A stretch of 64,000 nt of DNA from Scyliorhinus canicula (taxonomy: Eukaryota). The notes beneath the pieces were generated by a model. That model saw only the letters and a list, made by a program, of their open reading frames with translations, made no database searches and was not told where the DNA came from. Location: contig NC_052160.1 of assembly GCF_902713615.1 (NCBI RefSeq), positions 95,776,493-95,840,492 on the forward strand, in the 5' to 3' direction. Positions within the stretch are counted from its first letter, which is position 1, and every line of letters begins with the position of its first letter. Shown here in pieces: positions 1,950-55,561 of the stretch. Position numbers and translations under genes: made by a program.

Positions 1950-2230
1950 TGATGTACCATCAATTCGACTCAAGACACAATTAGGATCTGAACTGTGGCT
2001 TTAATCAGCTAGTTATTAGCCCGGTGGTCGACTACAGAGAATGGCTGACCGCCGAGAACTCTGGGTACTTATACCCCGCCTCGGAGGCGGGGCCTACTTG
2101 CCTGTCGACCAATTGGAGAGCAGTGACATGACTAGTCCCAACCAATCGGACGAGAGGCACATGACCAGCCAGAGCCAATGGGATACCAGTGCTCTGCACC
2201 AATGGCAATGCTCACATCCATACCACCACA
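1950..2230 (-). repeat. 3' LTR of Gypsy element 1
   Basis: Direct repeat of 6265-6541. Adjacent polypurine tract (minus strand aaggggtgaa). Confidence 0.92.
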
Positions 2231-5200
2231 TTCACCCCTTGTGGAGAAAGAAGGCGGGGGGGGGGAGTGTAAGTGGGAGAGAGAGAGGTGGGGGGGGGGG
2301 GTCCGAGGACTGGTGGTATGAGCAACGAAAATCGATAAGGATGGGCTGCCCACTGGCTCATGGCAAAACAATACTACTACTACTAACAACAGAGTAACAC
2401 AAAATGCCCAAAAAAAGTCCCATGGCCGCATCAGATGGGCACGATCAGCCTGTCGGGTGCCCGTGGTGTTCTGGAGGACCGTCGCAGTGGAGCCGGTGAC
2501 GTCGGGCTGATGGTCGTCCTTGCCTCCGGGAGCGTTGGTCGTAGATGTGTCTCCGTACCCTGGGCCGGTGGTGGAGACGCTGTAATCGGGGAAGAGGGGG
2601 GATGTGCGCTGGATCGTGGGGGTGCAGGGGGGAATTGGGGTTGGGGGGGGAGGTGTTGATGTAGGGGGAGAAGGCCGCACGCCGGCAGGTGCCAGGTCCC
2701 GAAGAGACTATCCTGCCGACTGCCGGGATACTCCACGTACGCATACTGTGGGTTGGCATGGAGTAACTGGACTCGCTCAACCAACGGGTCGGACTTGTGC
2801 ACCCGCACATGCTTCCGGAGCAAGATGGGCCCGGGGGTGGCCAGCCAGGTCGGGAGAGGGGATCCTGAGGACGACTTCCTGGGGAAAACAAGAAAACGTT
2901 CATGAGGTGTTTGATTAGTGGTAGTGCAGAGGAGAGGGCGGGGCGTCGGGGATGACCTCTTGCCAACGGGGGATAGGGAGATCTCTGGACCGTAGGGCCA
3001 GCAGGATGGTCTTCCAAATGGTGCCATTCTCCCGCTCGACCTGACCGTTACCCCGGGGGTAAAAACTGGTCGTCCTGCTAGAGGCTATGCACCTGCTGAG
3101 CAGGAATTGACACAGTGCGTCGCTCATAAAGGAGGATCCCTGGTCCCTGTGGATGTACGCGGGGTAACCGAACAGGGAGAAGATGGATAGGATGGCCTTT
3201 ATGACGGTTGTCGTGGTCATGTCGGGACAGGGAATGGCGAAAGGGAAGCGGGAGTATTCGTCGATAACACTCAAGAAATAAGTGTAACAGTTGGTGGAGG
3301 GGAGGGGGCCCTTGAAGTCTATACTGAGACGTTCAAAGCGGCAGGATGCCTTGATCAGATGCGCTCGTTCGGGGCGGTAGAAGTGTGGTTTGCACTCGGC
3401 GCAGACGTGGCAGTCCCTGGTGACTGTCCTGACTTCCTCGACGGAGTAGGGCAGGTTGCGGGTCTTAATAAAATGGTAAAAACGAGCTTCCCAGGATGAT
3501 ACAAGCTATCGTAGTTGTACGTGGACAACTCGATCGGCCACCGCAAGATCTTGTCGTTCTTGATCTTGCCCCTCTGTGCATTATCGAACATGAAAGCTAC
3601 TGACAGTTGGTCTGTGAGGAGGGTAAACCTCCTGCCGGCCAGATAGTGCCTCCAATCTCGCACAGCTTCGACTATGGCCTGTGCCTCCTTTTCCACCGAG
3701 GTATGGCGGATTTCGGAAGCGTGGAGGGTTCGTGAAAAGAAGGCCATGGGTCTGCCCGCTTGGTTCAGGGTGGCCGCCAGAGCTACGTCAGACGCGTCAC
3801 TCTCGACCTGGAATGGGAGGGACTCGTCGATAGCAAGCATCGTGGCCTTTGCGATATCAGCTTTGATGCGGCTAAAGGCCTGGCGGGCCTCCATCGACAG
3901 GGGAAAGGATGAGGGGGCGGGCTTTGTCTGCGTAGTTGGGGACCCACTGGGCGTAGTACGAGAAGAAGCCCAGGCAGTGTTTGAGGGAGTTGGGGAGAGG
4001 CAATTCCATCAGGGGGCGCATGCGTTCGGGATCGGGGCCTATCACTCCGTTACGCACTACGTAGCCAAGGATGGCTAGATGGTCGGTGCTAAACATGCAC
4101 TTATCCTTATTGTATGTTAAATTAAGGAGTTTTGCAGTTCGGAGGACTTTTTGGAGGTTGATGTCGTGGTCCTGCTGGTCGTGGCCGCAGATGGTGACGT
4201 TATCGAGATACGGGAAGGTGGCCCGTAAACTGTGCTTGTCGACCATTCGGTCCATCTCCCGTTGGAAGACCGAGACTCCATTTGTGACACCGAATGGAAC
4301 CCTGAGGAAGTGGTAGAGGTGCCCATCTGCCTCAAACGCGGTGTACTTTCGGTCACTCGCGCGGATGGGGAGCTGGTGGTAGGCGGACTTAAGGTCCACC
4401 GTGGAGAAGACTTTGTACTTCGCGATCCTGTTAACCAGGTCGGAAATACGGGGGAGAGGATACGCGTCCAGCTGCGTAAACCTGTTGATGGTCTGACTGT
4501 AATCAATGACCATCCGGTTTTTCTCCCCAGTCCGAACTACCAGCACTTGGGCTCGCCAGGGACTGTTGCTGGCCTCGATAACTCCTTCCTTAAGGAGCCT
4601 CTGGACCTCGGACCCGATGAAGGTCCGGTCCTGGGCACTGTATCGTCTGCTCCTAGTGGGTGACAGGTTTACAATCTGGGGTGAGATTAGCAAACAAGGA
4701 AGGGGGGTCCACTTTGAGGGACGCGAGGCTGCAAACAGTAAGAGGAGGAATAGAGCCGCCGAATTGAAAGGTCAAGCTCTGCAGGTTGCACTGCAAATCC
4801 AGGCCCAAGAGTGCCGGAGCGCAGAGACGGGGGAGAATGAGGAGTTTGAAGTTTTTGAAAACCCTCCCCTGGACCGTGAGGTCCGCTATGCAGCACCCGG
4901 TGATTTGGACGGAGTGCGAACCTGAGGCCAATTCAGTTTTATGTTTAACTGGATGGATGGGGAGCGCGCAGCGTCTTACCGTGTCGGGGTGGACGAAACT
5001 TTCCGTGCTCCCGGAGTCCAGCAGGCACCTCGTTTTGTGTCCGTTGAGCTGAACCGTTGTCGTAGTCTTGGCGAGCGTGCGTGGTCGCGACTGGTCGAGT
5101 TTGATGGAAGCCAGTCGTGGTGAGAGTTCCAGATCATCCTCATTGGCAGAGTAATCGCTTACAGGGCCTTCCGTGTTGGCCCAAGATGGCGGCGCCCAGG

Positions 5201-6264
5201 TCCCGCACGTGGAGCTGGGGCCCCAAAATGGCGGCGGTCGTGGCCCGCACATGGCGTCCGGGATCCAAGATGGCGGCACCCTTGGGAGCCTCGTGGCGGC
5301 TGGGGACAGTGTCAGCGGCGTCTGCGGTCCAGTCGGGGTGGCTAGGAGCGAGGGTCGGGAGGACCGTGGGGCCGTTGCGGGGGCCGGGAGGTGGGCCAGA
5401 GAGGTTGGTGCGCGGCACGGGGCCCTGGGGGGACCCGGGGGGGGGCAATCCGCGGTCGCTGCGCGGAACAGCAGTGACCGACTTGGTCTGGCAGACCACC
5501 GCGTAGTGGCCCTTCTTCCCGCAGCTCTTACACAGAGCGGAGCGGGCCGGGCAGCGCGGGCGGGGGTGCTCTGAGAGGCCACAGAAATAGCAACGGGGCC
5601 CCGCTAGTTTGTTGGAGCGACCCGCAGCGCAGGCTTGGGGGGGTCGGGGTCCACGGAGGACGGGGGTGGCGCGTGCCAAAAAGTCCAGGGGGTTGCTGCG
5701 GGGCCGGGGGCCTATGCACGGGCGTTCAGGTCAGCAATCTCCAGGGAGGTTGCAAGGGTCCGTGCCTCACCTAGGCTGAGGGCGTTCTTCTCCAGCAATC
5801 ATTGGCGGATAGAAGGGGACTGCATGCCAGCAACGTAAGCATCTCTGATTAAAAGTTCCATGTGCTCAGTCGCCGAAACTTGGAGACATGCGCACGTTCT
5901 CCCTAGAGCTGCGAGGGCCTGGTAAAACTCATCGAGGGACTCACCAGGGAACTGTTGTCTAGTCGTCAGGCGATGCCGTGCGTATACTTCGTTGACCGGC
6001 CGGAGAAAGTGTCCTTTGAGAATCTCCATGGCCGCATCAAAGTTGCCTTCGTCCTCCATCATTGCGTAGACCGCTGTGCACACGCACGAGTGGAGGATGT
6101 GGAGTTTCTGCTCCTTGGTGGGTTTGCCGGCTGCAGTCGTCAGGTAACTATTAAAACACGCCTGCCAATGTTTAATGATTGCAGACGCATTTGCAGCATG
6201 CGGGCTGGTGCGGAGGCAGTCAGGCTTGATGCGAAGCGTTTTCCAAAATTCTAGCTGATTAAAT

Positions 6265-6541
6265 TGATGTACCATCAATTCGACTCAAGACACAATTAGG
6301 ATCCGAACTGTGGCTTTAATCAGCTAGTTGTTAGCCTGGTGGTCGACTACAGAGAATGGCTGACCGCCGAGAACTCTGGGTACTTATACCCCGCCTCAGA
6401 GGCGGGGCCTACTTGCCTGTCGACCAATTAGAGAACAGTCACATGACTAGTCCCAAACAATCGGACGAGACATGACCAGCCAGAGCCAATGGGAAGCCAG
6501 TGCTCTGCACCAATGGCAGTGCTCATATCCATACCACCACA
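6265..6541 (-). repeat. 5' LTR of Gypsy element 1
   Basis: Direct repeat of 1950-2230, immediately followed on the minus strand by gag. Confidence 0.92.
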
Positions 6542-9000
6542 TACGGACCTCGGAAGTGCAGAAGATTTTAGTTTAGACGGGCAGCATGGTTGGCACAGGC
6601 TTGGAGGACCGAAGGGCCTGTTCCTGTGCTGTACGTTTCTTTGTTCTTTGCACTATAAAACAGATACTATAAATCATTTTATAACTATATGTCAGGAAGG
6701 AATCTTTTTTAAAGTTTTAAGTCTAGTTTCCTTAAGTTTTTATACTTTTTTTGCACTTTCAGACAGTACAAATAGTCTTTACTTGCTGTGTAAATTCTTT
6801 TCTTCCTGTCTGCTCTACGTTTGTTAACTGCCTTAAATTAATCCTCTAGTTACTAAGCCTTCTGCCACTGAAAAATGTTTTCTCCTTTATTTACTTTATT
6901 ATCCTTATTTTGAGCACATTTATAAAGTCTCACCTTAACCTTCATTAAGGAGAAACCTAGTTTCTATCACCTCCCATGTAACTGAAGCCTTTCATCTTTG
7001 GTGCCATTGCAGTATATTTTCTATACATCCTCTCTGAGGCCTGGACATTCTTCCTAAAATGATTCTTTGTATTATACTCTGCCTTTTAGTTACAAATCTG
7101 TTTTCCTTTTTCACATCCGTCTCAAGTACTTTCAAAGACTTGTGAATGCACACACCTGGCGCAGGATATTTCTGCTGGCTTCTGAACTTGGCCATCTGGC
7201 CCAAATGTCACTCGCCTCTGGATTTTCTCCAGGTTTATCAATTATGGTTAGAGGGCAAACATGCCAACCAATTAAGACTGGCTTGCAGCCTCTCAAAGCT
7301 GGAGGGCCAGTCAAAGGCCTTTCAGCTTGACAATAGCAGCAGGATGTGGCAAGTAAATGAGGGAGAGGGCACTCCAAACTGGAGGCACCCTTTACATCAT
7401 TTACAAATTAAACATTTTAAATGACCTTTGCAACAGGGCCATACATTGGTTGGTGACGAGAGGGAGGAAGGTTGGGCGAACCCCCCCTCCCACCGGGTGA
7501 CCTGGTACTGCACCCAGGCAAGTGGGGGCAACCTCTAAATTTGCCTAGAGTGCTGCACCCCCCCCCCCCCCCCCCAACCTGGTCTACCACAGGGAGGCTG
7601 CATCAAGGCAGCTAAACTGTCCCCAGCTGCCTGCAAGGACCTAGAGGCTGACTGGAAAGTCCCAGCCAGTCGCTTTCAAATAAGTAGTTTTTATCAAGCT
7701 TAATCGGCTACCTGCAGTGAGCGGGTGAGTAGAACTGCTGCACCCTGATCGCAGCTCTGGGGAAAAATGGCAAACGGGTGTGATGGAGCCTGGATACCAC
7801 TAGTTTTAGCAACAAACCATCTCCATTCCTGGTCCCACTAGAGTGAAAAATCCTCCCTCATATTTTGCATTGCCTCCGAGACATTCTTCCTGTGAAAATG
7901 AATCACCTCAGACCTGAAAGCTCATCTATGATTTGTCTGCCCATTTCCCCGGTCTGTCTCTTTCCCCAGTTACTCTCCTCCCTGATGAACATCAATCGAA
8001 CGCGAGACGAGTTGCTGTACAAAAGTTAGGCTTTAATAAGCTAGAAGTTAGCCCTGCGGTCGACTACAGTAAATGGACGACCGCCGGGCGTTCTGGGTAT
8101 TTATACCTCGCTCTGGAGGCGGGGTTAAATCAGCCTCTCGACCAATCGGAGAGTCGTCACATGACTGGTCTCAACCAATCGGTCGAGAGGCACATGACCG
8201 ACCAGGGCCAATGGTAAGCCAGTGTTCTGCACCAATGGCAGACAGCTATGCAAATCATACCACCACATTCACCCCTTGCGGAGAAAGAAGCCGGGGGGGG
8301 GGGGGGGATATCAACGAGAGCCGGGGGGGAGAGAACTGGTGGTATGCATAGCAGCCAGAGAAGGGAGAGAAAACATTTTGGCTTCCCACTGGCCCAGGCA
8401 ATTAACAATAGTACATATTGTCCCAACAAGGTCCATGGAGTTGTTGTAAATTAAATAGACTCGATCAGCCTTTTCGTGGCCCGTGACGTTCTGGCAGACC
8501 GCCGCAGTGGAGCTGGTGACATTGGTTCAGCCGATGGTGGTGGTTCCGCTGATGTCCTGGAGTCCGGGAGCGATGGTCCTTGAACAGTCTCTGTCACCCG
8601 GGCTGGTGGTGGAGACTCCATAGATGAGGAAGGGGTAGCCTGGGTGGGGTGCTGGGGGAAAAAAAACGGGGGGGGGGGGGGGTCTGTGGTGAAGGGGGGG
8701 AAGGCCGCACGCCGGCGGGTGCCAGGTCCCGGAGGGAGACCATGTCCTGCCGACCGTCGGGGTACTCCACATACACATACTGCGGGTTAGCGTGGAGTAA
8801 CTGGACTTGTTCCACCAACGGGTCGGACTTGTGCACCCGCACATGCTTCCGGAGCAAGATGGGCCCGGAGGTGGCCAGCCACGTCGGGAGCGGGGATCCT
8901 GAAGAAGACTTCCTAGGGAAGATAAGAAGACGTTCGTGAGGTGTTTGGTTAGTGGCAGTTCAGAGGAGTGACCAAATTGAATGGAGGGCGTCTGGGAGTA

Positions 9001-10216
9001 GGATGTGTTCTCCATGGAGAAGGATGTGTTCTACATGGAGCAGGATGAGTTCTCCATGGAGCAGGATGTGTTCTACATGGAGCAGGATGTGTTCTCCATG
9101 GAACAGGATGTGTTCTCCATGGAGCAGGATGTGTTCTCCATGGAGAAGGATGTGTTCTACATGGAGCAGGATGTGTTCTCCATGGTGCAGGATGTGTTCT
9201 CCATGGAGCAGGATGTGTTCTCCATGATGCAGGATGTGTTCTCCATGGAGCAGGATGTGTTCTCCATGGAGCAGGATGTGTTCTACATGGAGCAGGATGT
9301 GTTCTCCATGGTGCAGGATGTGTTCTCCATGGTGCAGGATGTGTTCTCCATGGAGCAGGATGTGTTCTCCATGGTGCAGGGTGTGTTCTACATGGAGCAG
9401 GATGTGTTCTCTATGGTGCAGAATGTGTTCTACATGGTGCAGGATGTGTTCTCCATGGAGCAGGATGTGTTCTCCATGGAGCAAGGTGTGTTCTCCATGG
9501 AGCAGGATGTGTTCTCCATGGAGCAGGATGTGTTCTCCATGGAGCAGGATGTGTTCTCCATGGAGCAGGATGTGTTCTCCATGGTGCAGGATGTGTTCTC
9601 CATGGTGCAGGATGTGTTCTACATGGAGCAGGATGTGTTCTCCATGGTGCAGAATGTGTTCTACATGGTGCAGGATGTGTTCTCCATGGAGCAGGATGTG
9701 TTCTCCATGGAGCAGGATGTGTTCTACATGGAGCAGGATGTGTTCTCCATGGAGCAGGATGTGTTCTCCATGGTGCAGGATGTGTTCTCCATGGAGCAGG
9801 ATGTGTTCTACATGGAGCAGCATGTATTCTCCATGGAGCAAGATGTGTTCTCCATGGAGCAGGATGTGTTCTCCATGGTGCAGGATGTGTTCTCCATGGA
9901 GCAGGATGTGTTCTCTATGGTGCAGGGTGTGTTCTACATGGAGCAGGATGTGTTCTCCATGGAGCAGGATGTGTTCTCCATGGAGCAGGATGTGTTCTCC
10001 ATGGAGCAGGATGTGTTCTCCATGGAGCAGGATGTGTTCTCCATGGAGCAGGATGTGTTCTCCATGGTGCAGGATGTGTTCTCCATGGAGCAGGATGTGT
10101 TCTCCATGGTGCAGGATGTGTTCTCCATGATGCAGGATGTGTTCTCCATGGTGCAGGGTGTGTTCTACATGGTGCAGGATGTGTTCTACATGGTGCAGGG
10201 TGTGTTCTCCATGTGT
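9001..10216. repeat. 21-bp tandem array (atggagcaggatgtgttctcc)n, about 58 copies
   Basis: Directly visible. Variation is limited to a few positions (tcc/tac, gag/gtg, gat/ggt). Produces the repetitive ORFs (MEQDVFS)n, (HGEHILL)n and (MCSPWSR)n. Confidence 0.97.
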
Positions 10217-10592
10217 TAATTTCTAGTGCATTGTAATGATTGAGTCAGTGCACTAAAGAACGTCTCGTTTGTGACTAATTTAGATTTATTAAATTAAAAT
10301 AACGTGTGTCAAAAACAATACTAATACTGCTAATGAACTGTAAATTGTTAACAACTAGAATACGAGAGCTAATACAAAACACGACTATCCACAATGACTC
10401 CTCACTCAGACTCCCCGAGGTTGCAGTGCTATGTGGTGTAGTTCTACTGCCACCTGCTGGTTGGAGGTTTAACAATTTAACATACAGAATTGCTTCTGTA
10501 TATCATTACTTCCTCAATTTTAGATTTTAACAAAAATACAATATGCATCATTTCAACCAATTATCAAACATATGATAACAATTCAAATTATT

Positions 10593-10778
10593 GGACTTCC
10601 GGTTGTGGTGATGCGGAGCTAAGCCACACGTTCCCGCTATTAAAGGACTTTCAGGCCTGTTTTAGGGCCCCAAACAGAGCTGTTTCGACGTTTCCCGGTG
10701 GGGGAAGGTGTTTGGAGAAACATTCCCGGAAGTTTATGGTGCGTACCCGGAGTGGGGCAAAGGAAAAGGCTGCAGCAG
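10593..10778 (+). mobile_element. 5' end (UTR and ORF1 start) of an L1/Tx1-like LINE, cut by the internal LTR
   Basis: CpG-rich ggacttccggttgtggtgatgcggagc... leader leading to ATG at 10736 (MVRTRSGAKEKAAA), ending exactly at the LTR. Assigned by pattern recognition only. Confidence 0.5.
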
Positions 10779-11049
10779 TGATGAACCATCAATTCAACGC
10801 GAGACGTGTTGCTGTACAATAGTAAGGCTTTAATAAGCTAGATGTTAGCCCTGCGGTCGACTACAGTAAATGGACGACCGCCGGACGTACTGGGTATTTA
10901 TACCCGTTAACTCAGCCTCTCGACCAATCGGGGAGCCGTCACATGACTGGTCTCAACCAATCGGTCGAGAGGCACATGACCGACCAGGGCCAATGGTAAG
11001 CCGATGTCCTGCACCAATGGCAGGCAGCTATGTTAATCATACCACCACA
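10779..11049 (-). repeat. Internal LTR of a related Gypsy subfamily
   Basis: TG...CA. Similar to the outer LTRs but with many substitutions and a ~16-bp deletion. Has its own polypurine tract. Confidence 0.9.
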
Positions 11050-12242
11050 TTCACCCCTTGCGGAGAAAGAAGCCGGGGGGGGGGGGGGGGGGGGGGACGG
11101 TGTCAACGAGAGCTGGGGGGGGGGGAGAAATGGTGGTATGAGTGGTAAGGAGAGAAAAAAAAAATGTATCCTTGGCTTCCCACTGGCCCAAACATTTAGC
11201 AACAGTACATAGTGTCCATACAAGGTCCATGGTGGTGTTGAAGTTAAATGGACTCGATCAGCCTTTCCGTTGCCCGTGACGTCCTGGCAGACCGCCGCAG
11301 GGGCGTTGGTGACGTTGGTTCAGCTGATGGTGGTGGTTCAGCTGATGTCCTGGACTCCGGGAGCGATGGTCCTTGAACTGTCTCCATACCCCGGGCTGGT
11401 GATGGAGACGCCATGGATGGGGAAGGGATGGCCTGGGTGGGGCGCTGGGGGAAAAGGGGCAGGGGGAGGGTCTGTGGTGAAGGGGGGGAAGGCCGCACGC
11501 CGGCGGGTGCCAGGTCCCGGAGGGAGACCGTGTCCTGCCGACCGTCGGGGTACTCCACATACGCATACTGCGGGTTAGCGTGGAGTAACTGGACTTGTTC
11601 CACCAACGGGTCGGACTTGTGCACCCGCACATGCTTCCGGAGCAAGATGGGTTCGGGGGCGGCCAGCCACGTCGGGAGAGGGGATCCGGAGGACGACTTC
11701 CTGGGGAAAACAAGAAGACGTTCATGAGGTGTCTGATTTGTTGTGGTGCAGAGGAGTGAGCGGATAGAATGTAGGGCATCGGGGATAACCTCTTGCCATC
11801 GGGAAATAGGGAGATCTCTGGACCGGAGGGCCAGTAGTATGGTCTTCCAGATGGTACCGTTCTCCCGCTCGACCTGCCCATTACCCCGAGGGTTATAGCT
11901 GGTCGTCCTGCTAGAGGCAATGCCACTGTTGAGCAGGAATTGACGCAGCTTGTCGCTCAAAAATGAGGACCCCCGATCGCTATGTATGTATGCGGGGTAG
12001 TCGAACAGGGAGAAGATGGAGAGGAGGGCCTTAATGACGGTCGATGTGGTCATGTCGAGGCAGGGAATGGCAAAGGGGAAGCGGGAGTATTCGTCGATTA
12101 CCGCCAGGAAGTAAATGCGGTTGCTAGAGGGAAGGGGCCCCTTGAAGTCAATGCTGAGTCGTTCGAAGGGATGGGATGCTTTGCTCAGATGAGCGCGCTC
12201 GGGGCGGTAGAAGTGCGGTTTGTGGATGTGGCAGTCACGGGT

Positions 12243-12584
12243 TAGAACATAGAACAGTACAGCACAGAACAGGCCCTTCGGCCCTCGATGTTGTGCTGAG
12301 CCATGATCACCCTACTCAAACCCACGTAACCACCCTATACCCGTAACCCAATAACCCCCCCTTAACCTTACTTTATTAGGACACTACGGGCAATTTAGCA
12401 TGGCCAATCCACCTAACCCGCACATCTTTGGACTGTGGGAGGAAATCGGAGCACCCGGAGGAAACCCACGCACACACGGGGAGGACGTGCAGACTCCGCA
12501 CAGACAGTGACCCAGCCGGGAATCGAACCTGGGACCCTGGAGCTGTGAAGCATTTATGCTAACCACCGTGCTACCCTGCTGCCC
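12243..12584 (-). mobile_element. HE1-like tRNA-derived SINE inserted in the Gypsy integrase
   Basis: Head gggcagcagggtagc with B box ggttcgattcc and a (ctatgtt)n tail. Near-identical to the copy at 47101-47446. Confidence 0.9.
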
Positions 12585-14455
12585 AGACTGTCCTGACTTC
12601 CTCGATGGAGAAAGGCAGGTTGTGGGCCTTTATGAAATGGAAGAAACGGGTCACCCCTGGATGGCAGAGGTCCGCGTGGAGGGAGCGGAGGCGGTCTATC
12701 TGCACGCTGGCGCAGGTACCGCGGGACAGAGCATCAGGAGGCTCATTGAGCTTCCCAGGACGATACAAGATCTCATAGTTGTACGTGGACAACTCGATCC
12801 GTCACCGTAAGATCTTGTCATTCTTAATCTTGCCCCTTTGTGCATTATCAAACATGAAGGCCACTGACCGTTGGTCTGTGAGGAGGGTAAACTTCCTGCC
12901 GGCCAAATAGTGCCTCCAATGTCGCACAGCTTCGACTATGGCCTGGGCTTCCTTTTCCACAGAGGAGTGGCGGAGTTCAGAAGCCTGGATGGTTCTGGAG
13001 AAGAAGGCCACGGGTCTGCCCGCTTGGTTCAGAGTGGCCGCCAGAGCTACTTCTGATGCGTCGCTCTCGACCTGGAAGGGGAGGGACTCGTCGATGGCGC
13101 GCATCGTGGCCTTTGCGATGTCCGCTTTCATGCAGCTAAAGGTCTGGCAGGCCTCTGTCGACGGCGGGAAGGTCGTGGTTTGAATGAGGGGACGGGCCTT
13201 GTCGGCGTAATTGGGAACCCATTGGGCGTAGTAAGCGAAGAAACCCAGGCAGCGTTTGAGGGATTTGAGGGAGATGGGGAGAGGGAGTTCCATCGGGGGC
13301 GCATGCATTCGGGGTCGGGGTCTATCACTCCGTTACGCACTACGTAGCCGAGGATGGCTAGACGGTCGGTGCTAAACACGCACTTATCCCTATTGTATGT
13401 GAGGTTAAGGAGTTTTGCGGTTTGGAGGAATTTCCGGAGGTTGGCGTCATGGTCCTGCTGGTCGTGGCCGCAGATGGTGACATTATCGAGATACGGGAAG
13501 GTAGCCCGTAATCCGTACTTGTCGACCATTCGGTCCATCTCCCGTAGGAAGACCGAGACCCCATTTGTGACACCAAATGGAACCGTAAGGAAGTAGTAGA
13601 GGCGTCCATCAGCCTCGAACGCGGTGTACTTGCGGTCACTAGCGCGGAGGGGGAGCTGGTGATAAGCGGACTTAAGGTCCACCGTGGAGAAGACTTTGTA
13701 TTTCGCGATATCGTTTACCATGGCGGAAATACGGGGATAGGATACGCGTCCAGTTGCGTAAACCGGTTGATGGGCTGGCTATAGTCGATGACCATCCGGT
13801 TTTTCTCCCCAGTCCAGACCACCAGCACTTGGGCTCGCCAGGGACTATTGCTGCCCTCGATGACCCCTTCCTTCAGTAACCTCTGGACCTCGGACCTGAT
13901 GAAGGTCCGGTCCTGGGTGCTGTACCGTCTGCTCCGTGTCGCGACGGGTTTGCAATTGGGGGTGAGATTAGCAAACAAGGAGAGGGGGGTCCACTTTGAG
14001 GGACGCGAGGCTGCAGACAGTGAGGGGGGGTATAGGGCTGCCGAATTGGAAGGTCAAGCTTTGCAGGTTGCACTGGAAGTCCAGTCCTAGGAGTGCCGGT
14101 GCGCAAAGGTCAGGGAGGACAAGGAGTTTGTAATTTTTAAAAACCTTCCCTTGGACCGTGAGGTCCGCGATGCAGCAGCCGGTGATGCGGACGGAGTGCG
14201 AACCTGAGGCTAACCCGATTTTGTGTTTTACAGGATGGAGCGTCTTACCCTGTCAGGGTGAACGAAGCTTTCCGTGCTCCCGGAGTCCAGCAGGCAGCCC
14301 GTCTCGTGGCCGTTGAGGTGGATCAGTGTCATTGTTTTGGCGAGCGTGCATGGCCGTGACTGGTCGAGTTGAATGGCCGCGAGCCGTGGAGAAGAACCAT
14401 CGTCGCAGTCGTCGTCGGCCGAGTAGTAGCTGGCAGAACCTTGTGTGCCCAGTCT

Positions 14456-14680
14456 AGGATGGTGGTGCCCACGATCCGCACGTGGAGTCCAGGTCCCAAG
14501 ATGGCGGCGCCCAGGACCCGCACGTGGAGTCGGGGCCCCAAGATGGCGGCGCCCAGGACCCGCACGTGGAGTCGGGGCCCCAAGATGGCGGTGCACAGGA
14601 CCCGCACGTGGAGTCGGCGCCCCAAGATGGCGGTGCCCAGGACCCGCACGTGGCATCCGGGACCCAAGATGGTGGCGCCC
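14456..14680. repeat. 42-bp tandem repeat (about 5 copies) in the gag C-terminal region of element 2
   Basis: caagatgg(c/t)gg at 14497, 14539, 14581, 14623 and 14665. cacgtg at 14479, 14521, 14563, 14605 and 14647. About 3 homologous copies in element 1 (5182, 5224, 5266). Confidence 0.9.
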
Positions 14681-17600
14681 GCGGGGCCCTCGTGGTTGCT
14701 GGGGGCGGGGATAGCGGTGCCGGCGGGCCGACCGGAGCGGCTGAGAGCGGGGGCAGAGAGGCGCGCAGGCCAGGCGCAGGGGCCCAGGGGCGGCAAGGAG
14801 AGAGTTGCGCGGTGCGCTGGAAGGGCCCGGAAGGGCCCGGAGAAGGGGGGAGGCGCATAGGGCGGGCGTAGGGGCCCGGAGGCGGGGGGGGGGGGGGGGG
14901 GGGGAGATTGGCGCGGTGTACTGGAAGGGCCCGCAAGGGCCCGGAGGGGGGGATCCCCGGTCGCTGCGCGGTACAGCAGCGACGGATTTGGCCTGGCAGA
15001 CGGAGGAGAAGTGGCCCTTCTTCCTGCAGCTTTTACAGAGGCCGGAGCGGGCCGGGCAGTATGGGCGAGGGTGTTTAGCGAACCCACAGAAATAGCAGCG
15101 GGGCCCCGCGGACTTGTCGGGGCGTCCCGCGGTGTTGGCCTGAGGGAGGTCGGGAGCGGCAGATGGTGGTGAGGAAGCGTGCCAGGAGGCCCAGGATGGT
15201 GCAGCGCGGCTGGGGACATAGGAGCGGGCGTTTAAATCGGCGACCTCCAGGGAGGTGGAGAGAGTCTGTGCCTCAGTTAGGCTGAGGTCGTCTTTCTCCA
15301 GCATCCGCTGGCGGATAGCGGCAGACTGCATCCCAGCCACGTAAGCATCTCTAATCAGAAGTTCCATGTGCTCCGTGGTTGAAACTTGGAGGCAGGAGCA
15401 ATTCCTCCCAGGATAGCGAGGACCTGGTAAAATTGGTCTAATGACTCACCGGGGAGCTGTTGTCTGGTGGCCAGCAGATGTCGGGCGAATACTCTGTTTA
15501 CCGGTTTAGGAAACTGTCCATTCAGCTTAAGCATGGCCGCATCGTAATCTTTTTCCTCCGCAATCATCGCGTAGACCGCCGTGCCCACGCTGGAGTGGAG
15601 GATGTGAAGCTTCTGTGCCATGGTGGGGGGGCTGTTTGTGGACGCCAGGTATCCCTCGAGACATGCCAGCCAATGTTGAAAGATTTCTGAGGCGTTCTAA
15701 GTTTGCGGGCTGATGCGGAGGCATTCGGGCTTGATCCGGAGCTCCATCTTCAAAATTCTAGCTTATTAAATTGATGAACCATCAATCGAACGCGAGATGA
15801 GTTGCTGTACAAAAGTTAGGCTTTAATAAGCTAGAAGTTAGCCCTGCGGTCGACTACAGTAAATGGACGACCGCCGGGCGTTCTGGGTATTTATACCTCG
15901 CTCTGGAGGCGGGGTTAACTCAGCCTCTCGACCAATCGGAGAGTCGTCACATGACTGGTCTCAACCAATCGGTCGAGAGGCACATGACCGACCAGGGCCA
16001 ATGGTAAGCCAGTGTTCTGCACCAATGGCAGACAGCTATGGAAATCATACCACCACACTCCCTCTTTGCTGTATTTGCGTTTCTGCAAATTTAAGAACTT
16101 ATTCCCGGTATTCCCAAGTCCAGGTAATTATATGAAAAAGAGCAGTGCTCCCTGGGGACACCACGGCACACTTTCCTCCAGTCTGGAAAACAGCTGTTCC
16201 CTCTGGCTCTCTCCTTTCTGTCCCTTAGCCAATACATGTCCACACAGCAGCCAATATCCCTTTAATCCCATTGGCTTCAATTTCTATTTAAAATGTTGTT
16301 GACATTATGGTATTAGCTGAAGGAGATGCCAGCTATAACTCAGTAAACTGATAATGATCGCAATGAACTTGAGGTGCCTCGAACCTTCTAGTGCATAATT
16401 GACGCAGTTAACCTTCCAGGCCAGGACTATCAGTGTATACTACACACTAATAATCTGTAAAACATGGCGGGGGTAGCACAGAATTAAGACGTCCTTTGAA
16501 ATCGTACAAAATGACAATTAATAGGATTGGTGAGAAAGCCATTCACAACCAACAATACTGTAGCAAATGCAAAGTGCTGCCAGAAGTGGAAATTTAAATT
16601 GAATATCAGGAAAGGAAGAAAACATTCAGGTCCAGCAGCATCTGTGGAGAGATTAAAAAAAACAAGAGTTAATGTTTTGGACCATGACTTTTCATTCGAA
16701 CTAACGGAATTTAAAGACCTAATAGTTTATACAGAGCCAGATGAGGAGTGGGTTGGTGAACACTAAGGATAGGGTGATAGGGTGGAGGACAGGAGAGATT
16801 AAATGGTGTAAGTGGTGATTGTGACAAGCCAAAGGTACAAGTAAAGGTACAAAATAAAGGCCGAGAGGTGTAATTGAACGCAGTGGAATCATTTATAAAG
16901 CAAGCTTTGCAGCAGGCTATAATTATTGGTCTCAAATATTTTTCTGTGATTTAAAATTTGAAGATAAGCCATGAATTTTAAATTGTTGCTATAAATAATC
17001 TTTGACAGGTCTATCATTCCAGTCCCAGTGTAGTGTTGCATTAAATTTATCTGGACATAAAGATTATACTACAGCTGAAGTGATCCTGCTTAGTAGATAC
17101 CATATGCTGAAGTGCTGTCAACTCATTAGCAATTTATTCGTGCTTTTCGTCTATGAACTTTACCCCTTATCAAAGACTTTATTTTTAACACACTTTTTTG
17201 CGCTTGTTACCATTAAGACATTGATTCTCTGCAAATTTTGATAGTATTTAGAAGGTGATATTTTAAAAATGTGCTCATGGATCATTGATACACACTTTTC
17301 CTGAAGCCTTCTAAAACTGTAACTCTTGTCATATATTTTTGGCTGTGAGGGACAGCAGAGCTGCTGTGATCCTGAAATGACCTCCTAGTTCACTCAACTG
17401 GTGAGCTGTTGCCATCTTAGAACCAAGATGAAATTTGTTTCGGTCTGTCCCTGTTTTTGCAGAACTTAACTAGCTGTACTCTGACATGGTGTGAAAGGAA
17501 AACGCGCACATTGAAAGCTGAAGGTTTATTGTAACCCTCACAAACTTGCCTGCTGTAACAATTTTAATTCATTTACTTAAGTAAATGACAAAGCTGTATT

Positions 17601-18837
17601 ATATTTGCCGCATTACGGGAGATATGATTCATAAGTGAGAATGCACCATCATATGTGCTGTAGCTTAGAGGAATTACAACCATGTCTTGCAAAAGTTGAA
17701 TCTTGCAAAAGTTGCATCAGAGCACAAGAATTGGAAATGGAAACCCGACCATGATAGGAGGAAGTAAAGCGGCTCCAAAAATGTTTGGAACAAAAGGACA
17801 GTGCAGGTTGCTTTCGTTTACACAACCCCGTATTGCCCGTCTCTCCAGAATACAGTCGGACACCAGGATGCGAGCTATCCAACATTGTGTGGACCTAGAG
17901 GGCATTTTGTTGAGAATATAACTTTACTGATTATAAAGCCGCCTTACGGATATAAGAAGCGAAACATTGTGGACCTTGCTGGACGCAAGGAGGAAAATGT
18001 ACTTCAACAAGATGATATTGCAAGTTTATGCTCATTGTGTTCTGCTACCAGATTGCTTAACTGAGATTTCCAGTTGGTTATGTGTGGAGAGAGTGAAGTA
18101 AAGTTAATCTGGAGCACTCAATGTATCATTTGATAGTACAGTTGTCAAATCAATTTAGTCATCCAATGCAAATAATATCTATTGAGCATATAAGCTGTTT
18201 GTTGCACGTTCTTAATTGCTGGAGGAGTTCACAGTGAAAGGTTAATGTTGAGATGAGTATGGTCAGTCTGCTTATTAATAAGGCAACGGGTAAGTCCTGC
18301 ACATTCCTACATTTAGTATGTATACAGGTATAGTAGCCCCAATCCAGCAACTGCTGGATCAAATCAGTACCAGATTCCAGAACTTGCCAATTTTTGGGGA
18401 GGATAATTTAGAACCCACTTAATTCAGTGACTAGGGCACACAAGAAAAACAAATGGTACAACTGTAAAACACTTTAAGTGTATTGCATTTAATAACTCCC
18501 CCTACATCCCTACATTAGCACACACACTGGGCGCGATTCTCCGGACTCACGACGGTTCGGAGAATAGCGGGCGTCGCAAATTTTTACGGCGACGCTGTTC
18601 CGACGCCCTCCCGCTATTCTCCGAACCCCGCAAAATCTCGGAGTCGCCATTCCCACCAAACGCCTCCTTCCCGCCCCCGACACGACCAGATTCGCCACTA
18701 ATAGCCCCCCCTGCTATTCACCGCCCGGATGGGCCGAAGTCCCGACATCATCGCGCCCTGTTTGCACGGCGTGAAACACACCTGCTATTTAAGTTCGTCA
18801 ACCAGTCGGGCTGGCTGACGACAGCTTGGAGGAGGTG

Positions 18838-42638: not shown

Positions 42639-43195
42639 GGTCAGGATTCTCCAAAATCCCGGACATGTGTTGACGCCGGCATCAAAACCGGCGCGAGCGA
42701 TGCCGGCGTCAACGGGCCTCCAGGCCCAGTCATTCTCCCCCTCCTCAGGGACTAGCATGGCACCGAAAGCCGGCCCTACATGGCCCAGCGCGGGTCCACG
42801 CATGTGCGCCACGGCCGTCTCCGCCCCCCCCCCCCCTCCCCCCCCGGGGCAACATGGTGGAGCCCTACAGCAGCCCAGCGTGGAGGAACATAGGCGCCAC
42901 CCGGAATGAGCGTGCCCACCGATCGGTTGCCCCCGTTCGCGGGACTGGCCACCGTGGAGGCCCCCCACCCCCAACCAGGATGGCTCCCGCAGCCAGAACA
43001 CCGAGGTCCCGCCGGGTAGGACCATACGCGAACAACGCTGGCAGGACTCTGAGGAACTCAGCGGGCACTCGGCCCATCGAGCACGGAGAATCGCCGCAGG
43101 AGCCGCTTTCAATGGCCCCTGGCCCGAGCGACCAGAGAATCAGTTGCCCGGCGACAGAGTGGTGTGGCGGGGAGCGGGCTTGGAGATTCCCGCCC
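42639..43195. mobile_element. Non-autonomous Harbinger-type element
   Basis: Ends ggtcaggattctcc / ggagattcccgccc. GC-rich interior. Confidence 0.55.
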
Positions 43196-53973: not shown

Positions 53974-54133
53974 CCTATCCCCATAACCCAGTAACCTCAA
54001 CTAACCCTTTGGGCACTGAGGGGCAATTTAGCATGGCCAATCCAGACAGTCACCGAGGCCGGAATTGAACCCAGTCCCTGGTGCTGTGAGGCAACAGTGC
54101 TACCTCTGTGCCATCGTGTTGCACCAAAAAAAC

Positions 54134-54218
54134 CAACTCCACCGGGACTCGAACCCGGAACCTTTGAATGTCTGCAGCCGTTATAGGTCCAATGCACTAT
54201 CCGTTGCCCCATGGAGCC
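54134..54218 (-). tRNA. Intron-containing tRNA-Arg(UCU)-type gene or pseudogene whose anticodon reads UAU
   Basis: Minus strand reads GGCTCCATGGGGCAACGGATAGTGCATTGGACCTATA-acggctgcagac-ATTCAAAGGTTCCGGGTTCGAGTCCCGGTGGAGTTG followed by GT7. This is a vertebrate tRNA-Arg-TCT body with a 12-nt intron at the canonical site and a Pol III T-run. U33C and a D-stem mismatch suggest a pseudogene. Confidence 0.85.
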
Positions 54219-55561
54219 ACCTTTACAGAATCTATGGGCTTTTGCATGGCTCGGCCACTAGGGAACCCGCCACAGTGGATTGACTTCAGCGGGATCAGAT
54301 GACACTGCCGTCAGGAAGGACCGGAAATTCCCACCCTATGTCCCACAAAGAACAATAAGGAATGTTTATTGAGGGTTGGAGCTTGGCCAGGATCTTTACC
54401 TGAACTGACAAGACAGTGCCTTGGTTAAATGTTTGTTCTGAACAATGGCATCTCTGGCAATGCAGCATTCCATAAGTGTTGGAGTATCTGTCTGGATTAT
54501 GGGCTGAAGGACAAGACTGTGCTTGAATCCACATTCTTCTGAATCCAAAACCAACAGCAGCAAAAGTAATCCAGCTATGCTGCAAATCCAGGTCTTGTGG
54601 CATGATTTAAAGAAAGACCTGGCAACATTCAGGCCCTCAGGCAACATGAAAACTGATGGATTAACAATTATCGGATTACTGATTATGAGATATTGCTATG
54701 TATAGGGTGGTTGTCAATAAAAATGTCTGCGTACACAACAGTAAAGGGTGTGTCTCAGAGAACTGATAAAAGTTCAATATCAATTAGGATATTTCATTAT
54801 ATGTAATTAAATATTCCCACAATATGAGTCAGAGTGCTCATGCTGCATTTTAACAACAATTAAACGGTTTCAAAAGAAAAGTAATTTCCTGATAGATACC
54901 AAGAGCAATGAAACACCACTTAATGGTAGAAGACGAATTTCCAATTTCACAGTTCAAGTGACATGAACGAGGTGTTTGAACTGTGCCCACCAATTCAGTT
55001 CTCATGTGAAGCTCAAAGCAGAGTTTATGTTGCTTTTAGATCTCCACTCTACCCGACATCAAACTGTCCAGTGAGGCCAGTGACAAATTGTCCTGGATTT
55101 GCAGCAGTATCTCAGTGAATGGAATTTAAAGACTTATTTTTAACTCTCCTTATCTCAGCTGTGCTGGCAGGAGGAGACAACAGAGGATCAGTAACAATAT
55201 TTCCATCACCAGCTATCCACCAATCTTAGCACAGGAGTGTTAAAGGGGGAATCTGCCTGCACTGTTCTCGCACTGAAAGACCAATTCAGAGGATTGAGGC
55301 CTTTTTGGCACATTTGACCCCATCCTTTCAGAGAACGTAAAACATAGAACATAGAACATAGAGTGCAGAAGGAGGCCATTCGGCCCATCGAGTCTGCACC
55401 GACCCACTTAAACCCTCACTTCCACCCTATCCCAGTAACCCCGCAACCCAAAAACCCCTCCTAACCTTTTTGGTCACTAAGGGGAATTTATCATGGCCAA
55501 TCCACCTAACCTGCATTACTTTGTCTGCGTAGCAGCTTCACGCAACTCTGGCAGAGACCAC

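What the first reader, a model, noticed from the sequence alone, without database searches (positions are those of the whole stretch)
15756..15836. Gypsy elements with no tRNA primer site: the PBS is a perfect complement of their own LTR, with a compensatory change between families (candidate self-priming)
Seen in sequence: in element 2 the minus-strand sequence 1 nt after the 5' LTR is TTTAATAAGCTAGAA (15770-15756). It is not a TGG-type tRNA PBS. It is the exact 15-nt reverse complement of LTR positions 15836-15822. In element 1 the same two sites (6263-6251 and 6327-6315, 13 nt) both read ...ATCAGCTAG instead of ...ATAAGCTAG, so the A/C change is mirrored on both sides and pairing is preserved. 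The 3' end of the LTR segment pairs next to the LTR end, which is the orientation needed to prime minus-strand strong-stop DNA. Established knowledge: S. pombe Tf1 self-primes through such a duplex plus cleavage. Inference: this chromodomain-less, two-zinc-knuckle (Mag-like) lineage self-primes. Unlike Tf1, the primer segment seems to lie about 30 nt inside the transcript (TATAAATA at 15895-15888). It also contains the ATTAAA poly(A) signal, so the duplex could also, or instead, mask premature 5'-LTR polyadenylation.
Basis: partly seen in the sequence, partly recalled or inferred. Interest (0 to 1): 0.85.

Follow-up and report, generated by a model that had tools for sequence, protein, structure and literature searches.

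The report
Self-priming Gypsy retrotransposons, primer at poly(A) signal
Two decayed shark Gypsy-type retrotransposons, and at least 26 related families from comb jellies to butterflies, lack a tRNA primer site. The bases right after their left repeat pair exactly with a piece of that repeat ending at the poly(A) signal, so they most likely start DNA copying by priming on their own RNA, a variant of a mechanism proven only in fission-yeast Tf1.

Summary
In element 2 (minus strand), 15770-15756, one base after the 5' LTR end, is the exact 15-nt reverse complement of LTR 15836-15822. Element 1 has the same layout (6263-6251 / 6327-6315, 13 nt), and the A/C difference is mirrored on both sides.

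It is far beyond chance. In 28 distinct families (RT 45-61% identical to the window's), the longest perfect inverted repeat upstream of gag is this duplex. These include young intact copies in Mnemiopsis and Papilio. The duplex is 11-18 nt, starts 1-2 nt after the LTR's terminal CA, and has a different sequence in each family. The first runs hold 373 Watson-Crick pairs with no G·U inside, and pairing ends sharply. No family has TGG at the site. The LTR arm usually ends in A(A/T)TAAA followed by an unpaired RCCU.

Best reading (0.68): Tf1-like self-priming, with the PBS re-copied from the primer at each cycle, and possibly masking of the 5' poly(A) signal as well. The lineage has no chromodomain and is not Tf1/sushi. 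Its LTR features fit 'Mag C', but no tree was made. No paper I could search describes this. The same scan noted it several times on other DNA of this genome.

Class: new variant of a known kind. The mechanism is inferred, not shown.

The parts
15772..16057 (-). Element 2, 5' LTR (286 nt, TGTGG...TCATCA)
   Evidence: Alignment of the four LTRs and motif coordinates. The TSD GGGAG lies at 16058-16062 and 7978-7982.
15822..15836 (-). Element 2 candidate self-primer segment (5' arm) in R, TTCTAGCTTATTAAA. Its last six bases, 15829-15824, are the LTR's only ATTAAA.
15756..15770 (-). Element 2 primer-binding site (3' arm), TTTAATAAGCTAGAA. It follows the LTR's CA (15773-15772) and a 1-nt spacer, A15771.
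15888..15895 (-). TATAAATA box. An Inr-like CCATTT has its A at 15864, 31 nt downstream, which is the predicted transcription start, 28 nt before the 5' arm.
   Evidence: Sequence reading. The same spacing occurs in element 1 (TATAAGTA ... CCATTC). This is predicted, not mapped.
15806..15807 (-). Candidate poly(A) cleavage site (CA, 18 nt after ATTAAA). This would make it the R/U5 border.
   Evidence: Weak. Five RNA-read molecules share a boundary at 15807 in run X21, and minus-lying depth drops across this point. The library orientation is not resolved.
15769..15787 (-). U5-terminal hairpin GATTGATG-gtt-CATCAATT abutting the PBS (U5-IR-like). It is specific to the shark families.
   Evidence: RNAalifold of the two leaders. 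It is not conserved in other families.
7983..8267 (-). Element 2 outer 3' LTR, preceded by the PPT AAGGGGTGAA at 8268-8277. It carries the same arm at 8032-8046 and has no PBS after it.
10779..11049 (-). Element 2 inner (third) LTR copy, with its PPT at 11050-11059. Its arm, ATCTAGCTTATTAAA at 10829-10843, differs by one base at the distal end. It is followed by CTGCTG..., not by a PBS.
11244..15367 (-). Element 2 gag-pol remnants: two CCHC knuckles, protease DSG, RT with YLDN, RNase H and integrase. The reading frame is broken by stops, frameshifts and insertions.
   Evidence: ORF list and Pfam matches RVT_1, RT_RNaseH and rve.
6265..6541 (-). Element 1, 5' LTR (277 nt)
6315..6327 (-). Element 1 candidate self-primer segment, CTAGCTGATTAAA
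6251..6263 (-). Element 1 primer-binding site, TTTAATCAGCTAG, after CA and spacer A6264
1950..2230 (-). Element 1 3' LTR, with the PPT at 2231-2240 and the arm copy at 2000-2012
2431..6250 (-). Element 1 leader and gag-pol remnants (broken)

Best explanation
These are decayed copies of a non-chromoviral Ty3/gypsy lineage that primes minus-strand DNA synthesis with its own RNA instead of a tRNA.

Proposed steps (all inferred):
1. In the genomic RNA, a 13-15 nt segment of R that ends in the poly(A) hexamer (15836-15822) folds back onto the sequence that starts 1 nt after U5 (15770-15756).
2. The RNA is cut at the 3' end of that segment, at the conserved AAA|RCCU junction. By analogy with Tf1 this would be done by the element's RNase H.
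3. The new 3'-OH is extended through the spacer, U5 and the rest of R. This gives a strong-stop DNA of about 51 nt.
4. The strong-stop DNA transfers to the 3' R through the roughly 15 nt that lie between the hexamer and the poly(A) site.
5. Plus-strand strong-stop synthesis then copies the RNA primer, so the PBS of each new copy is re-templated from the LTR segment.

Step 5 would explain why the two sides match perfectly in every family and why an LTR change such as T/G at 15828/6321 reappears at the PBS. The same duplex probably also hides the 5' copy of the poly(A) signal, because the partner sequence exists only downstream of the 5' LTR.

What is shown: the pairing, its position and its conservation through sequence change. 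What is inferred: the cleavage, the priming, the re-templating and the masking.
For: (1) Position. In 28 families the duplex starts 1-2 nt after the LTR's terminal CA, with consensus ..CAA|TTTA. That is where minus-strand synthesis must start, because this start point defines the U5 end.
(2) Covariation. Paired columns 3-12 carry 2-4 different Watson-Crick pair types each (column 11 two, columns 7-10 and 12 four), which needs at least about 24 double changes.
(3) Own versus foreign LTR. A family's PBS matches its own LTR over 10-18 nt. It matches other families' LTRs mostly over 5-7 nt; the few longer cross-matches, apart from one 10-nt match between elements 1 and L035, involve close relatives or share the hexamer. 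A leader window 40 nt further downstream matches the own LTR over 4-7 nt. Coding-region controls never give more than 10 nt.
(4) Pair quality. The first runs hold 373 Watson-Crick pairs with no G·U inside, and pairing drops to noise just beyond the run. This is the pattern of templated copying, as seen with tRNA PBSs, rather than of a selected RNA stem.
(5) No alternative primer site. No family has TGG within -2 to +8 of the site, and Rfam finds no tRNA likeness.
(6) Young copies. The layout is present in recent, intact copies: Mnemiopsis L089 (LTRs 100% identical, 1222-aa ORF) and Papilio L090 (LTRs 99.3% identical).
(7) Precedent. Tf1, Tf2 and Tj1 self-prime from an R segment that pairs with the PBS and is cleaved by RT (PMC4600332, PMC5341516). 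Self-priming is also predicted for Tf1/sushi, Tcn1 and plant TAR elements (PMC6317226).
(8) Expression. Sense-orientation RNA reads cover the family at about 20-50x in two runs.
Against: There is no experimental evidence for cleavage or priming in any member. In the shark elements the TATA-to-Inr spacing predicts a start 28 nt upstream of the segment. The primer would therefore not be the 5' end of the RNA as it is in Tf1, and an extra 5' tail would need explaining. If the poly(A) site is about 18 nt after the hexamer, only about 15 nt of R is left for the first strand transfer, which is short. Whole-leader folding energies are not significantly better than shuffles (z = -1.5 and -1.7). PBS positions 1-4 and 10-11 are partly conserved across families (TTTA.....CT), so some of the similarity reflects shared ancestry or another constraint. 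The overlap with the poly(A) hexamer is not required for priming and points to a second, or alternative, role. Both window copies are dead. One more distant relative (L092, 45% RT identity) lacks the duplex.
Confidence: 0.68

Rival explanations
1. The duplex is only a regulatory RNA structure. It hides the promoter-proximal A(A/T)TAAA in the 5' R so that full-length RNA is made. Reverse transcription is primed by something else.
For: In 15 of 28 families the LTR arm ends in ATTAAA or AATAAA, and in several more it ends in a close variant. The partner sequence exists only after the 5' LTR, not after the 3' or inner LTRs. Retroviruses with the signal in R must also suppress the 5' copy (general knowledge).
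Against: A masking stem need not begin exactly 1-2 nt after the LTR's CA in all 28 families. No other primer site is visible (no TGG). A selected RNA stem should tolerate G·U pairs and bulges, yet 373 pairs are Watson-Crick with sharp ends. Several families have arms without any hexamer (L001, L007, L033, L037, L089) and still keep the duplex at the same place.
Confidence: 0.12
2. Self-priming occurs in trans or from the 3' copy. The primer comes from the arm in the 3' R of the same RNA or from a co-packaged RNA, and not from a fold-back of the 5' R.
For: The same arm is present in every LTR copy. Sequence alone cannot tell the two arm copies, or the two RNAs, apart. A 5' tail of 28 nt on a cis primer would be avoided.
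Against: The 3' copy is followed by about 18 nt plus the poly(A) tail, so a cut is needed there as well. Tf1-type priming is described as a fold-back of the 5' R (PMC5341516). Loop lengths are tightly distributed, at 36-66 nt in 25 of 28 families. That suggests an intramolecular hairpin.
Confidence: 0.1
3. A host small RNA, such as a tRNA fragment, ending in ...UAGUNNAUUAAA is the primer. The LTR segment merely resembles it.
For: PBS positions 1-4 and 9-12 are partly conserved across families (TTTA..ACTA). From memory only and untested: the shark arm plus the following GCCTAAC resembles the D-arm region of vertebrate mitochondrial tRNA-Phe.
Against: Family-specific differences at positions 5-9 and beyond 12 are always matched by the family's own LTR. 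Nothing would require the LTR to carry the primer's sequence. The Rfam tRNA model gives no hit on the LTR or leader even at E up to 10. Hosts range from ctenophore to shark.
Confidence: 0.04
4. The match is chance or a by-product of AT-rich sequence.
For: The arms are AT-rich and the leader folds are not significant by z-score.
Against: A 15-nt exact complement at a fixed position has a chance of the order of 1e-7 per element. It recurs with different sequences in 28 families. Controls give 4-7 nt.
Confidence: 0.01

Closest known systems
Tf1 / Tf2 / Tj1 self-primed reverse transcription (fission yeasts), and the predicted self-priming of the Tf1/sushi group in fungi and vertebrates (PMC4600332, PMC5341516, PMC6317226; Butler et al. 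2001 cited there)
   Same: There is no tRNA PBS. The PBS just downstream of the 5' LTR is complementary to a segment of R in the element's own RNA. A cut at the 3' end of that segment would give the primer. The strong-stop DNA covers U5 plus the rest of R.
   Different: This is a different lineage: no chromodomain and no Retrotrans_gag hit. The segment is 11-18 nt and ends in the poly(A) hexamer followed by a conserved RCCU. In the shark elements it lies about 28 nt inside the predicted transcript rather than at its first base. The remaining R is only about 15 nt. A U5-IR-like hairpin is seen only in the shark families. Nothing has been tested experimentally.
Mag lineage of Ty3/gypsy (Mag, SURL/C-clade, Jule)
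   Same: The elements are compact (about 4-5 kb) with a single gag-pol ORF of about 1200 aa and two CCHC knuckles. They have no chromodomain and short LTRs (104-302 nt). The LTR ends resemble the 'Mag C' motifs TGTNATRT and AYANAACA of PMC3601003. The lineage is spread across Metazoa, including vertebrates.
   Different: Mosquito Mag elements have PBSs complementary to tRNA-Ser, tRNA-Leu or tRNA-Arg (PMC3286476), and these elements have none. I could not place the lineage on a tree with named references, so membership is open.
Conserved Hairpin Site of fungal GalEa (Ty1/copia) elements (PMC5445492)
   Same: There is no tRNA PBS, and a conserved inverted repeat occupies the PBS position.
   Different: In GalEa both 9-nt arms lie downstream of the LTR and are conserved in sequence, with a fixed A/A mismatch. 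Here one arm lies inside the LTR (in R), and the sequences differ between families.
Retroviral suppression of the 5' poly(A) signal by RNA structure (for example the HIV-1 poly(A) hairpin; general knowledge)
   Same: A poly(A) hexamer in R sits inside a helix in the 5' leader.
   Different: Here the helix is long-range, its partner is the PBS itself, and the partner is absent at the 3' end.

Membership tests
Tf1-type self-priming retroelements (mechanistic class) | No PBS complementary to a tRNA 3' end | tested here: met
   No TGG lies within -2 to +8 of the site in 28 families. Rfam gives no tRNA-like hit on the LTR or leader. PBS sequences differ between families.
Tf1-type self-priming retroelements (mechanistic class) | The PBS next to the 5' LTR is complementary to a segment of the element's own R region | tested here: met
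   Exact duplexes of 15 and 13 nt in the window, and 10-18 nt in 26 further families.
Tf1-type self-priming retroelements (mechanistic class) | The primer segment is the very 5' end of the mRNA | tested here: inconclusive
   The shark elements have TATA at -59 and an Inr-like A at -28 relative to the segment. The Mnemiopsis LTR leaves only 41 nt before the segment, so the start must be at or near it there. No 5'-end data were available, and the reads did not resolve a start.
Tf1-type self-priming retroelements (mechanistic class) | RNase H-dependent cleavage of the RNA at the end of the duplex, and extension from that end | not testable with these tools
   This needs biochemistry or mapping of cDNA ends.
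Tf1/sushi group (chromoviruses), as a phylogenetic family | Chromodomain at the integrase C-terminus and a Ty3/Tf1-type Gag | tested here: not met
   Pfam at E up to 0.01 on four full-length relatives, and the precomputed domains of 120 relatives, show no Chromo and no Retrotrans_gag. The window pieces also show none.
Mag lineage (C-clade / SURL-like) | Placement within the clade on an RT-RNase H-integrase tree with named references | not tested
   No named reference sequences were reachable. Database names were uninformative ('transposon opus', 'hypothetical protein').
Mag lineage (C-clade / SURL-like) | Compact element, single gag-pol, short LTRs with TGT...ACA ends of the Mag C type | tested here: met
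   LTRs are 104-302 nt and elements are about 3.8-4.6 kb. LTR ends read TGTGATGA / TGTTGTGA ... (T/C)A(C/T)AACA, against Table 3 of PMC3601003.
Mag lineage (insect Mag proper) | PBS complementary to tRNA-Ser or tRNA-Leu | tested here: not met
   No TGG-type PBS was found. PMC3286476 reports Ser, Leu or Arg PBSs for mosquito Mag elements.
CsRn1 clade | tRNA-Trp PBS and a CHCC Gag motif | tested here: not met
   Gag has two CX2CX4HX4C knuckles and there is no TGG PBS. The defining features are taken from PMC2582038.

The most novel reading that the evidence does not exclude
One RNA duplex does two jobs in a metazoan-wide clade that runs from ctenophore to shark. While closed, it hides the promoter-proximal poly(A) signal so that full-length RNA is made. 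When cut at the conserved AAA|RCCU junction, it supplies the primer whose 3' end is the poly(A) hexamer itself. The PBS is then rewritten from the LTR at every cycle. Such elements would be independent of host tRNAs and invisible to the 3'-tRNA-fragment defence that targets tRNA PBSs (that defence is reviewed in PMC7472051).
Probability: 0.3. Interest if true: 0.8.

Novelty: new variant of a known kind. Interest (0 to 1): 0.62.

Why it matters
Self-priming has been proven only for fission-yeast Tf1-type elements and has been predicted for their chromoviral relatives and a few plant lineages. This finding would extend it to a separate, very widespread animal lineage.

It has a practical consequence. 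Annotation pipelines that look for tRNA PBSs, such as the 12-nt tRNA search used in PMC13524379, would leave these elements without a primer site or assign a spurious tRNA.

It also links primer choice to poly(A)-signal control, and it gives a simple mechanistic reason, re-templating, for perfect LTR/PBS co-variation.

The idea is directly testable in species that hold young intact copies, such as Mnemiopsis and Papilio.

Tried and rejected
- A tRNA primer is rejected. ARAGORN and Rfam on the window find only one tRNA-like locus at 54133-54219, unrelated to the site. A permissive Rfam scan of 15700-16060 gives no tRNA hit.
- I recalled a resemblance of the shark arm to the mitochondrial tRNA-Phe D-arm. 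I could not test it, because no host mitochondrial genome was reachable. The family-specific covariation argues against it.
- A scan of viral contigs for relatives found nothing.
- Clade naming through database names failed, as did the PDB route, which returned only Ty3, caulimovirus and retroviral proteins.
- Older papers were not held: Springer 1991 on SURL, Volff 2001 on Jule, Levin 1995, and Lin & Levin 1997/1998. Prior description there cannot be excluded.
- TATA-box distances across families were not informative, because most LTRs have no clear TATA.
- A U5 hairpin abutting the PBS is not a shared feature: mean stem 4.3 against 4.2 in controls.
- A second, outer helix (GGGCU/AGCCC in element 2 against AGGCU/AGCCU in element 1), which I saw by eye in the folds, was not kept by RNAalifold. 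It rests on two sequences only.
- The trait boundary could not be found. Loci without the duplex mostly have no detectable LTR pair. L091 has no 5' LTR on its contig, and L092 shows only a 7-nt match.
- RNA reads did not resolve a start site. The boundary at 15807 rests on 5 molecules in a library of uncertain orientation.
- Three look-ups gave no DNA because the sample files were too large.
Full report
**1. The observation**

Both elements lie on the minus strand.

- Element 2 has its 5' LTR at 15772-16057 (TGTGG...TCATCA). Its outer 3' LTR is at 7983-8267, behind the polypurine tract AAGGGGTGAA. A 5-bp target duplication, GGGAG, flanks the outer pair.
- After the LTR's CA comes one A (15771), then TTTAATAAGCTAGAA (15770-15756). 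This is the exact reverse complement of TTCTAGCTTATTAAA (15836-15822) in the LTR.
- Element 1 (5' LTR 6265-6541, 3' LTR 1950-2230) has the same layout. CA is followed by A6264 and then TTTAATCAGCTAG (6263-6251), which pairs with CTAGCTGATTAAA (6327-6315).
- The single difference within the shared 13 nt is present on both sides (U-A in element 2, G-C in element 1).
- The arm is present in all five LTR copies in the window. The partner sequence exists only after the two 5' LTRs.
- In the whole window, perfect inverted repeats of 13 nt or more with a 15-110 nt loop occur at five places, and two of them are these.
- Both leaders fold with this helix in the MFE and centroid structures, but the whole-leader energies are not significant (z = -1.5 and -1.7).

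**2. What the elements are**

The broken ORFs encode a Gag with two CX2CX4HX4C knuckles, a DSG protease, RT, RNase H and integrase. No chromodomain or Ty3/Tf1-type Gag domain is found in them. None is found in four full-length relatives scanned at E up to 0.01, or in the precomputed domains of 120 relatives.

The nearest named proteins are from the catshark Scyliorhinus torazame (75-80% identity) and the stingray Hypanus sabinus, so the host is a cartilaginous fish. Full-length relatives of about 1200 aa occur in a ctenophore, an isopod, a butterfly, an aphid and a fluke, and in many marine metagenomes.

**3. The test across families**

An exhaustive RT search gave proteins for look-ups of their encoding contigs. 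A metagenome scan gave 80 more loci. LTR pairs were found in about 20 of the loci. The LTRs are 104-302 nt and the elements are about 3.8-4.6 kb, behind a conserved GGGG(T/A)GAA tract.

- Fifty loci had at least 600 nt upstream of RT. In about 30 of them the longest perfect inverted repeat is a duplex whose 3' arm sits right after ...CA plus 1-2 nt.
- Equal-length coding regions never gave more than 10 nt.
- With one representative per family (28 families, two of them from the window), the PBS window matches its own LTR over 10-18 nt. It matches other families' LTRs mostly over 5-7 nt. A leader window 40 nt further downstream matches the own LTR over 4-7 nt.
- Paired columns 3-12 carry two to four different Watson-Crick pair types each. 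There are three mismatches in total, all in older copies.
- The first uninterrupted runs contain 373 Watson-Crick pairs with no G·U inside, and pairing drops to noise directly beyond the run.
- No family has TGG at the site.
- The layout is present in young copies: Mnemiopsis L089 (LTRs 100% identical, intact ORF) and Papilio L090 (LTRs 99.3% identical).

**4. Shared anatomy**

- The LTR ends ..CA, followed by a spacer A (21 of 28) or two bases.
- The PBS usually begins TTTA(A/T).
- The LTR arm therefore ends in ATTAAA (8 families), AATAAA (7 families) or a near variant. An unpaired RCCU follows it.
- The loop, which is the rest of R plus U5, is 21-87 nt long, and 36-66 nt in 25 families.
- Positions 10-11 of the PBS are also rather conserved (..CT), so the arms are not free to vary everywhere.
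- Duplex free energies average about -14 kcal/mol.

**5. Where the segment lies in the transcript**

In both shark elements a strong TATA box (TATAAATA or TATAAGTA) is followed 31 nt later by an Inr-like CCATT(T/C). This predicts a start at 15864, 28 nt before the arm.

In Mnemiopsis only 41 nt of LTR precede the arm, so the start there must be at or very near it. Most other LTRs have no clear TATA.

RNA reads from the same species show low-level coverage of the family in the sense orientation, at about 20-50x in two runs. They also show a shared read boundary at 15807, a CA 18 nt after ATTAAA. That fits a poly(A) site, but it rests on five molecules in a library whose orientation I could not settle.

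**6. Mechanism**

The place where minus-strand synthesis starts defines the end of U5. A duplex whose end sits 1-2 nt from the LTR's CA in 28 families is therefore what a primer/PBS pair looks like.

The published model for Tf1 and Tf2 is as follows. An R segment pairs with the PBS. RT cuts it from the mRNA and extends it through U5 and R. The short cDNA then moves to the 3' end (PMC5341516, PMC4600332).

Applied to this element, the cut would fall after ...AUUAAA. The strong-stop DNA would be about 51 nt. About 15 nt of R would remain for the transfer.

Plus-strand strong-stop synthesis copies the primer. The PBS of each new copy would then be rewritten from the LTR arm. The maximum uninterrupted length of 18 nt fits the distance between the polymerase and RNase H sites known for retroviral RTs. 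That last point is general knowledge and inference, not a test.

The overlap with the poly(A) hexamer is not needed for priming. It suggests that the same duplex also masks the 5' signal, because the partner is absent at the 3' end. Masking alone does not explain the fixed position, the missing alternative primer site, or the families whose arm has no hexamer yet keeps the duplex.

**7. Comparison with what is known**

Self-priming has been shown for Tf1. It is predicted for the Tf1/sushi group from fungi to vertebrates, for Tcn1 elements and for plant TAR copia elements (PMC6317226, PMC4600332).

The present lineage fails the chromodomain test and is not Tf1/sushi. Its size, single ORF, two knuckles, short LTRs and LTR ends fit the 'Mag C' (SURL) description in PMC3601003. 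However, mosquito Mag elements carry tRNA-Ser or tRNA-Leu PBSs (PMC3286476), and I could not build a tree with named references. It is not CsRn1, which has a tRNA-Trp PBS and a CHCC Gag motif (PMC2582038).

The older papers on SURL, Jule and Tf1 were not held, so I cannot exclude an earlier mention.

**8. Earlier notes of this scan**

A word search showed that this layout has been noted several times on other DNA of the same genome. Follow-up agents reached the same reading: self-primed Gypsy elements, with the primer at the poly(A) signal, from corals to sharks. I reached my result from my own searches before reading those notes, and they are not independent evidence.

New in this report:
- the ctenophore and butterfly cases in named genomes;
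- the own-versus-foreign LTR control;
- the count of zero G·U pairs and the re-templating argument built on it;
- the conserved RCCU after the arm;
- the TATA-to-Inr prediction;
- the tentative poly(A) boundary.

**9. Verdict**

Self-priming is the best-supported mechanism (about 0.68), but no step of it has been observed. The finding is a new variant of a known kind.

Noticed in passing
window 4199-4210 and about 13420 (RT motif C); proteins P0026, P0156, P0004, P0239 and others: The RT catalytic motif reads Y-x-D-N instead of YxDD in both window elements. It also does so in about half of the full-length relatives fetched (63 N against 56 D among 1100-1400-aa proteins). These include the Mnemiopsis copy with 100% identical LTRs. 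It therefore looks like a working lineage trait and not decay. It does not track the self-primer layout, because Papilio has YLDD and also has the duplex.
   Followed up: partly
window 7983-16057: Element 2 has three LTR copies (7983-8267, 10779-11049, 15772-16057) and two PPTs, with the TSD GGGAG around the outer pair. The stretch 8448-8963 repeats 11241-11751 at 87-92% identity. This points to a tandem or recombinant structure.
   Followed up: partly
window 8995-10213; 14458-14680; 5180-5281: A 21-bp tandem array of 58 copies lies between the inner LTR and the outer 3' LTR. A 42-bp repeat lies inside gag of both elements, with 5.3 and 2.4 copies.
   Followed up: no
window 12156-12701: RNA-read depth reaches the thousands on both strands, with many joints and loose ends, against 20-50 elsewhere in the element. 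An abundant short repeat (SINE-like?) appears to sit inside element 2's pol.
   Followed up: no
window 15821-15818 and 6314-6311; the same place in the related loci: Directly after the LTR arm there is an unpaired, conserved R-C-C-T: G or A in 23, C in 22, C in 21 and T in 21 of 28 families. It may be a cleavage determinant or part of the poly(A) context.
   Followed up: partly
window 15923-15988 (also 8133-8198 and 10915-10980): U3 holds a 33-bp duplication with repeated ATTGG (CCAAT-box) motifs and an 11-nt inverted repeat, GCCTCTCGACC / GGTCGAGAGGC.
   Followed up: no
window 54133-54219 (-): A tRNA-like locus. ARAGORN calls it tRNA-Tyr with anticodon ATA and Rfam scores it 33.8 bits. It is probably a tRNA-derived repeat or a pseudogene.
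   Followed up: no
window 18554-18627 and 42669-42713: These are perfect inverted repeats of 18 nt (loop 38) and 15 nt (loop 15), among the longest in the window. Their nature is unknown.
   Followed up: no
L092:150-180: A more distant relative (45% RT identity) has no LTR/PBS duplex. It has a local 7-bp hairpin, ACAAATT...AATTTGT, after ...CACAA. It may mark the edge of the self-priming clade, or it may be a decayed copy.
   Followed up: partly
PMC12471100 (Saci2/lennie elements of tapeworms): [quoted passage not shown] A Spirometra protein is 55% identical to the window RT (P0363). It would be worth checking whether Saci2-like elements share the self-primer layout.
   Followed up: no
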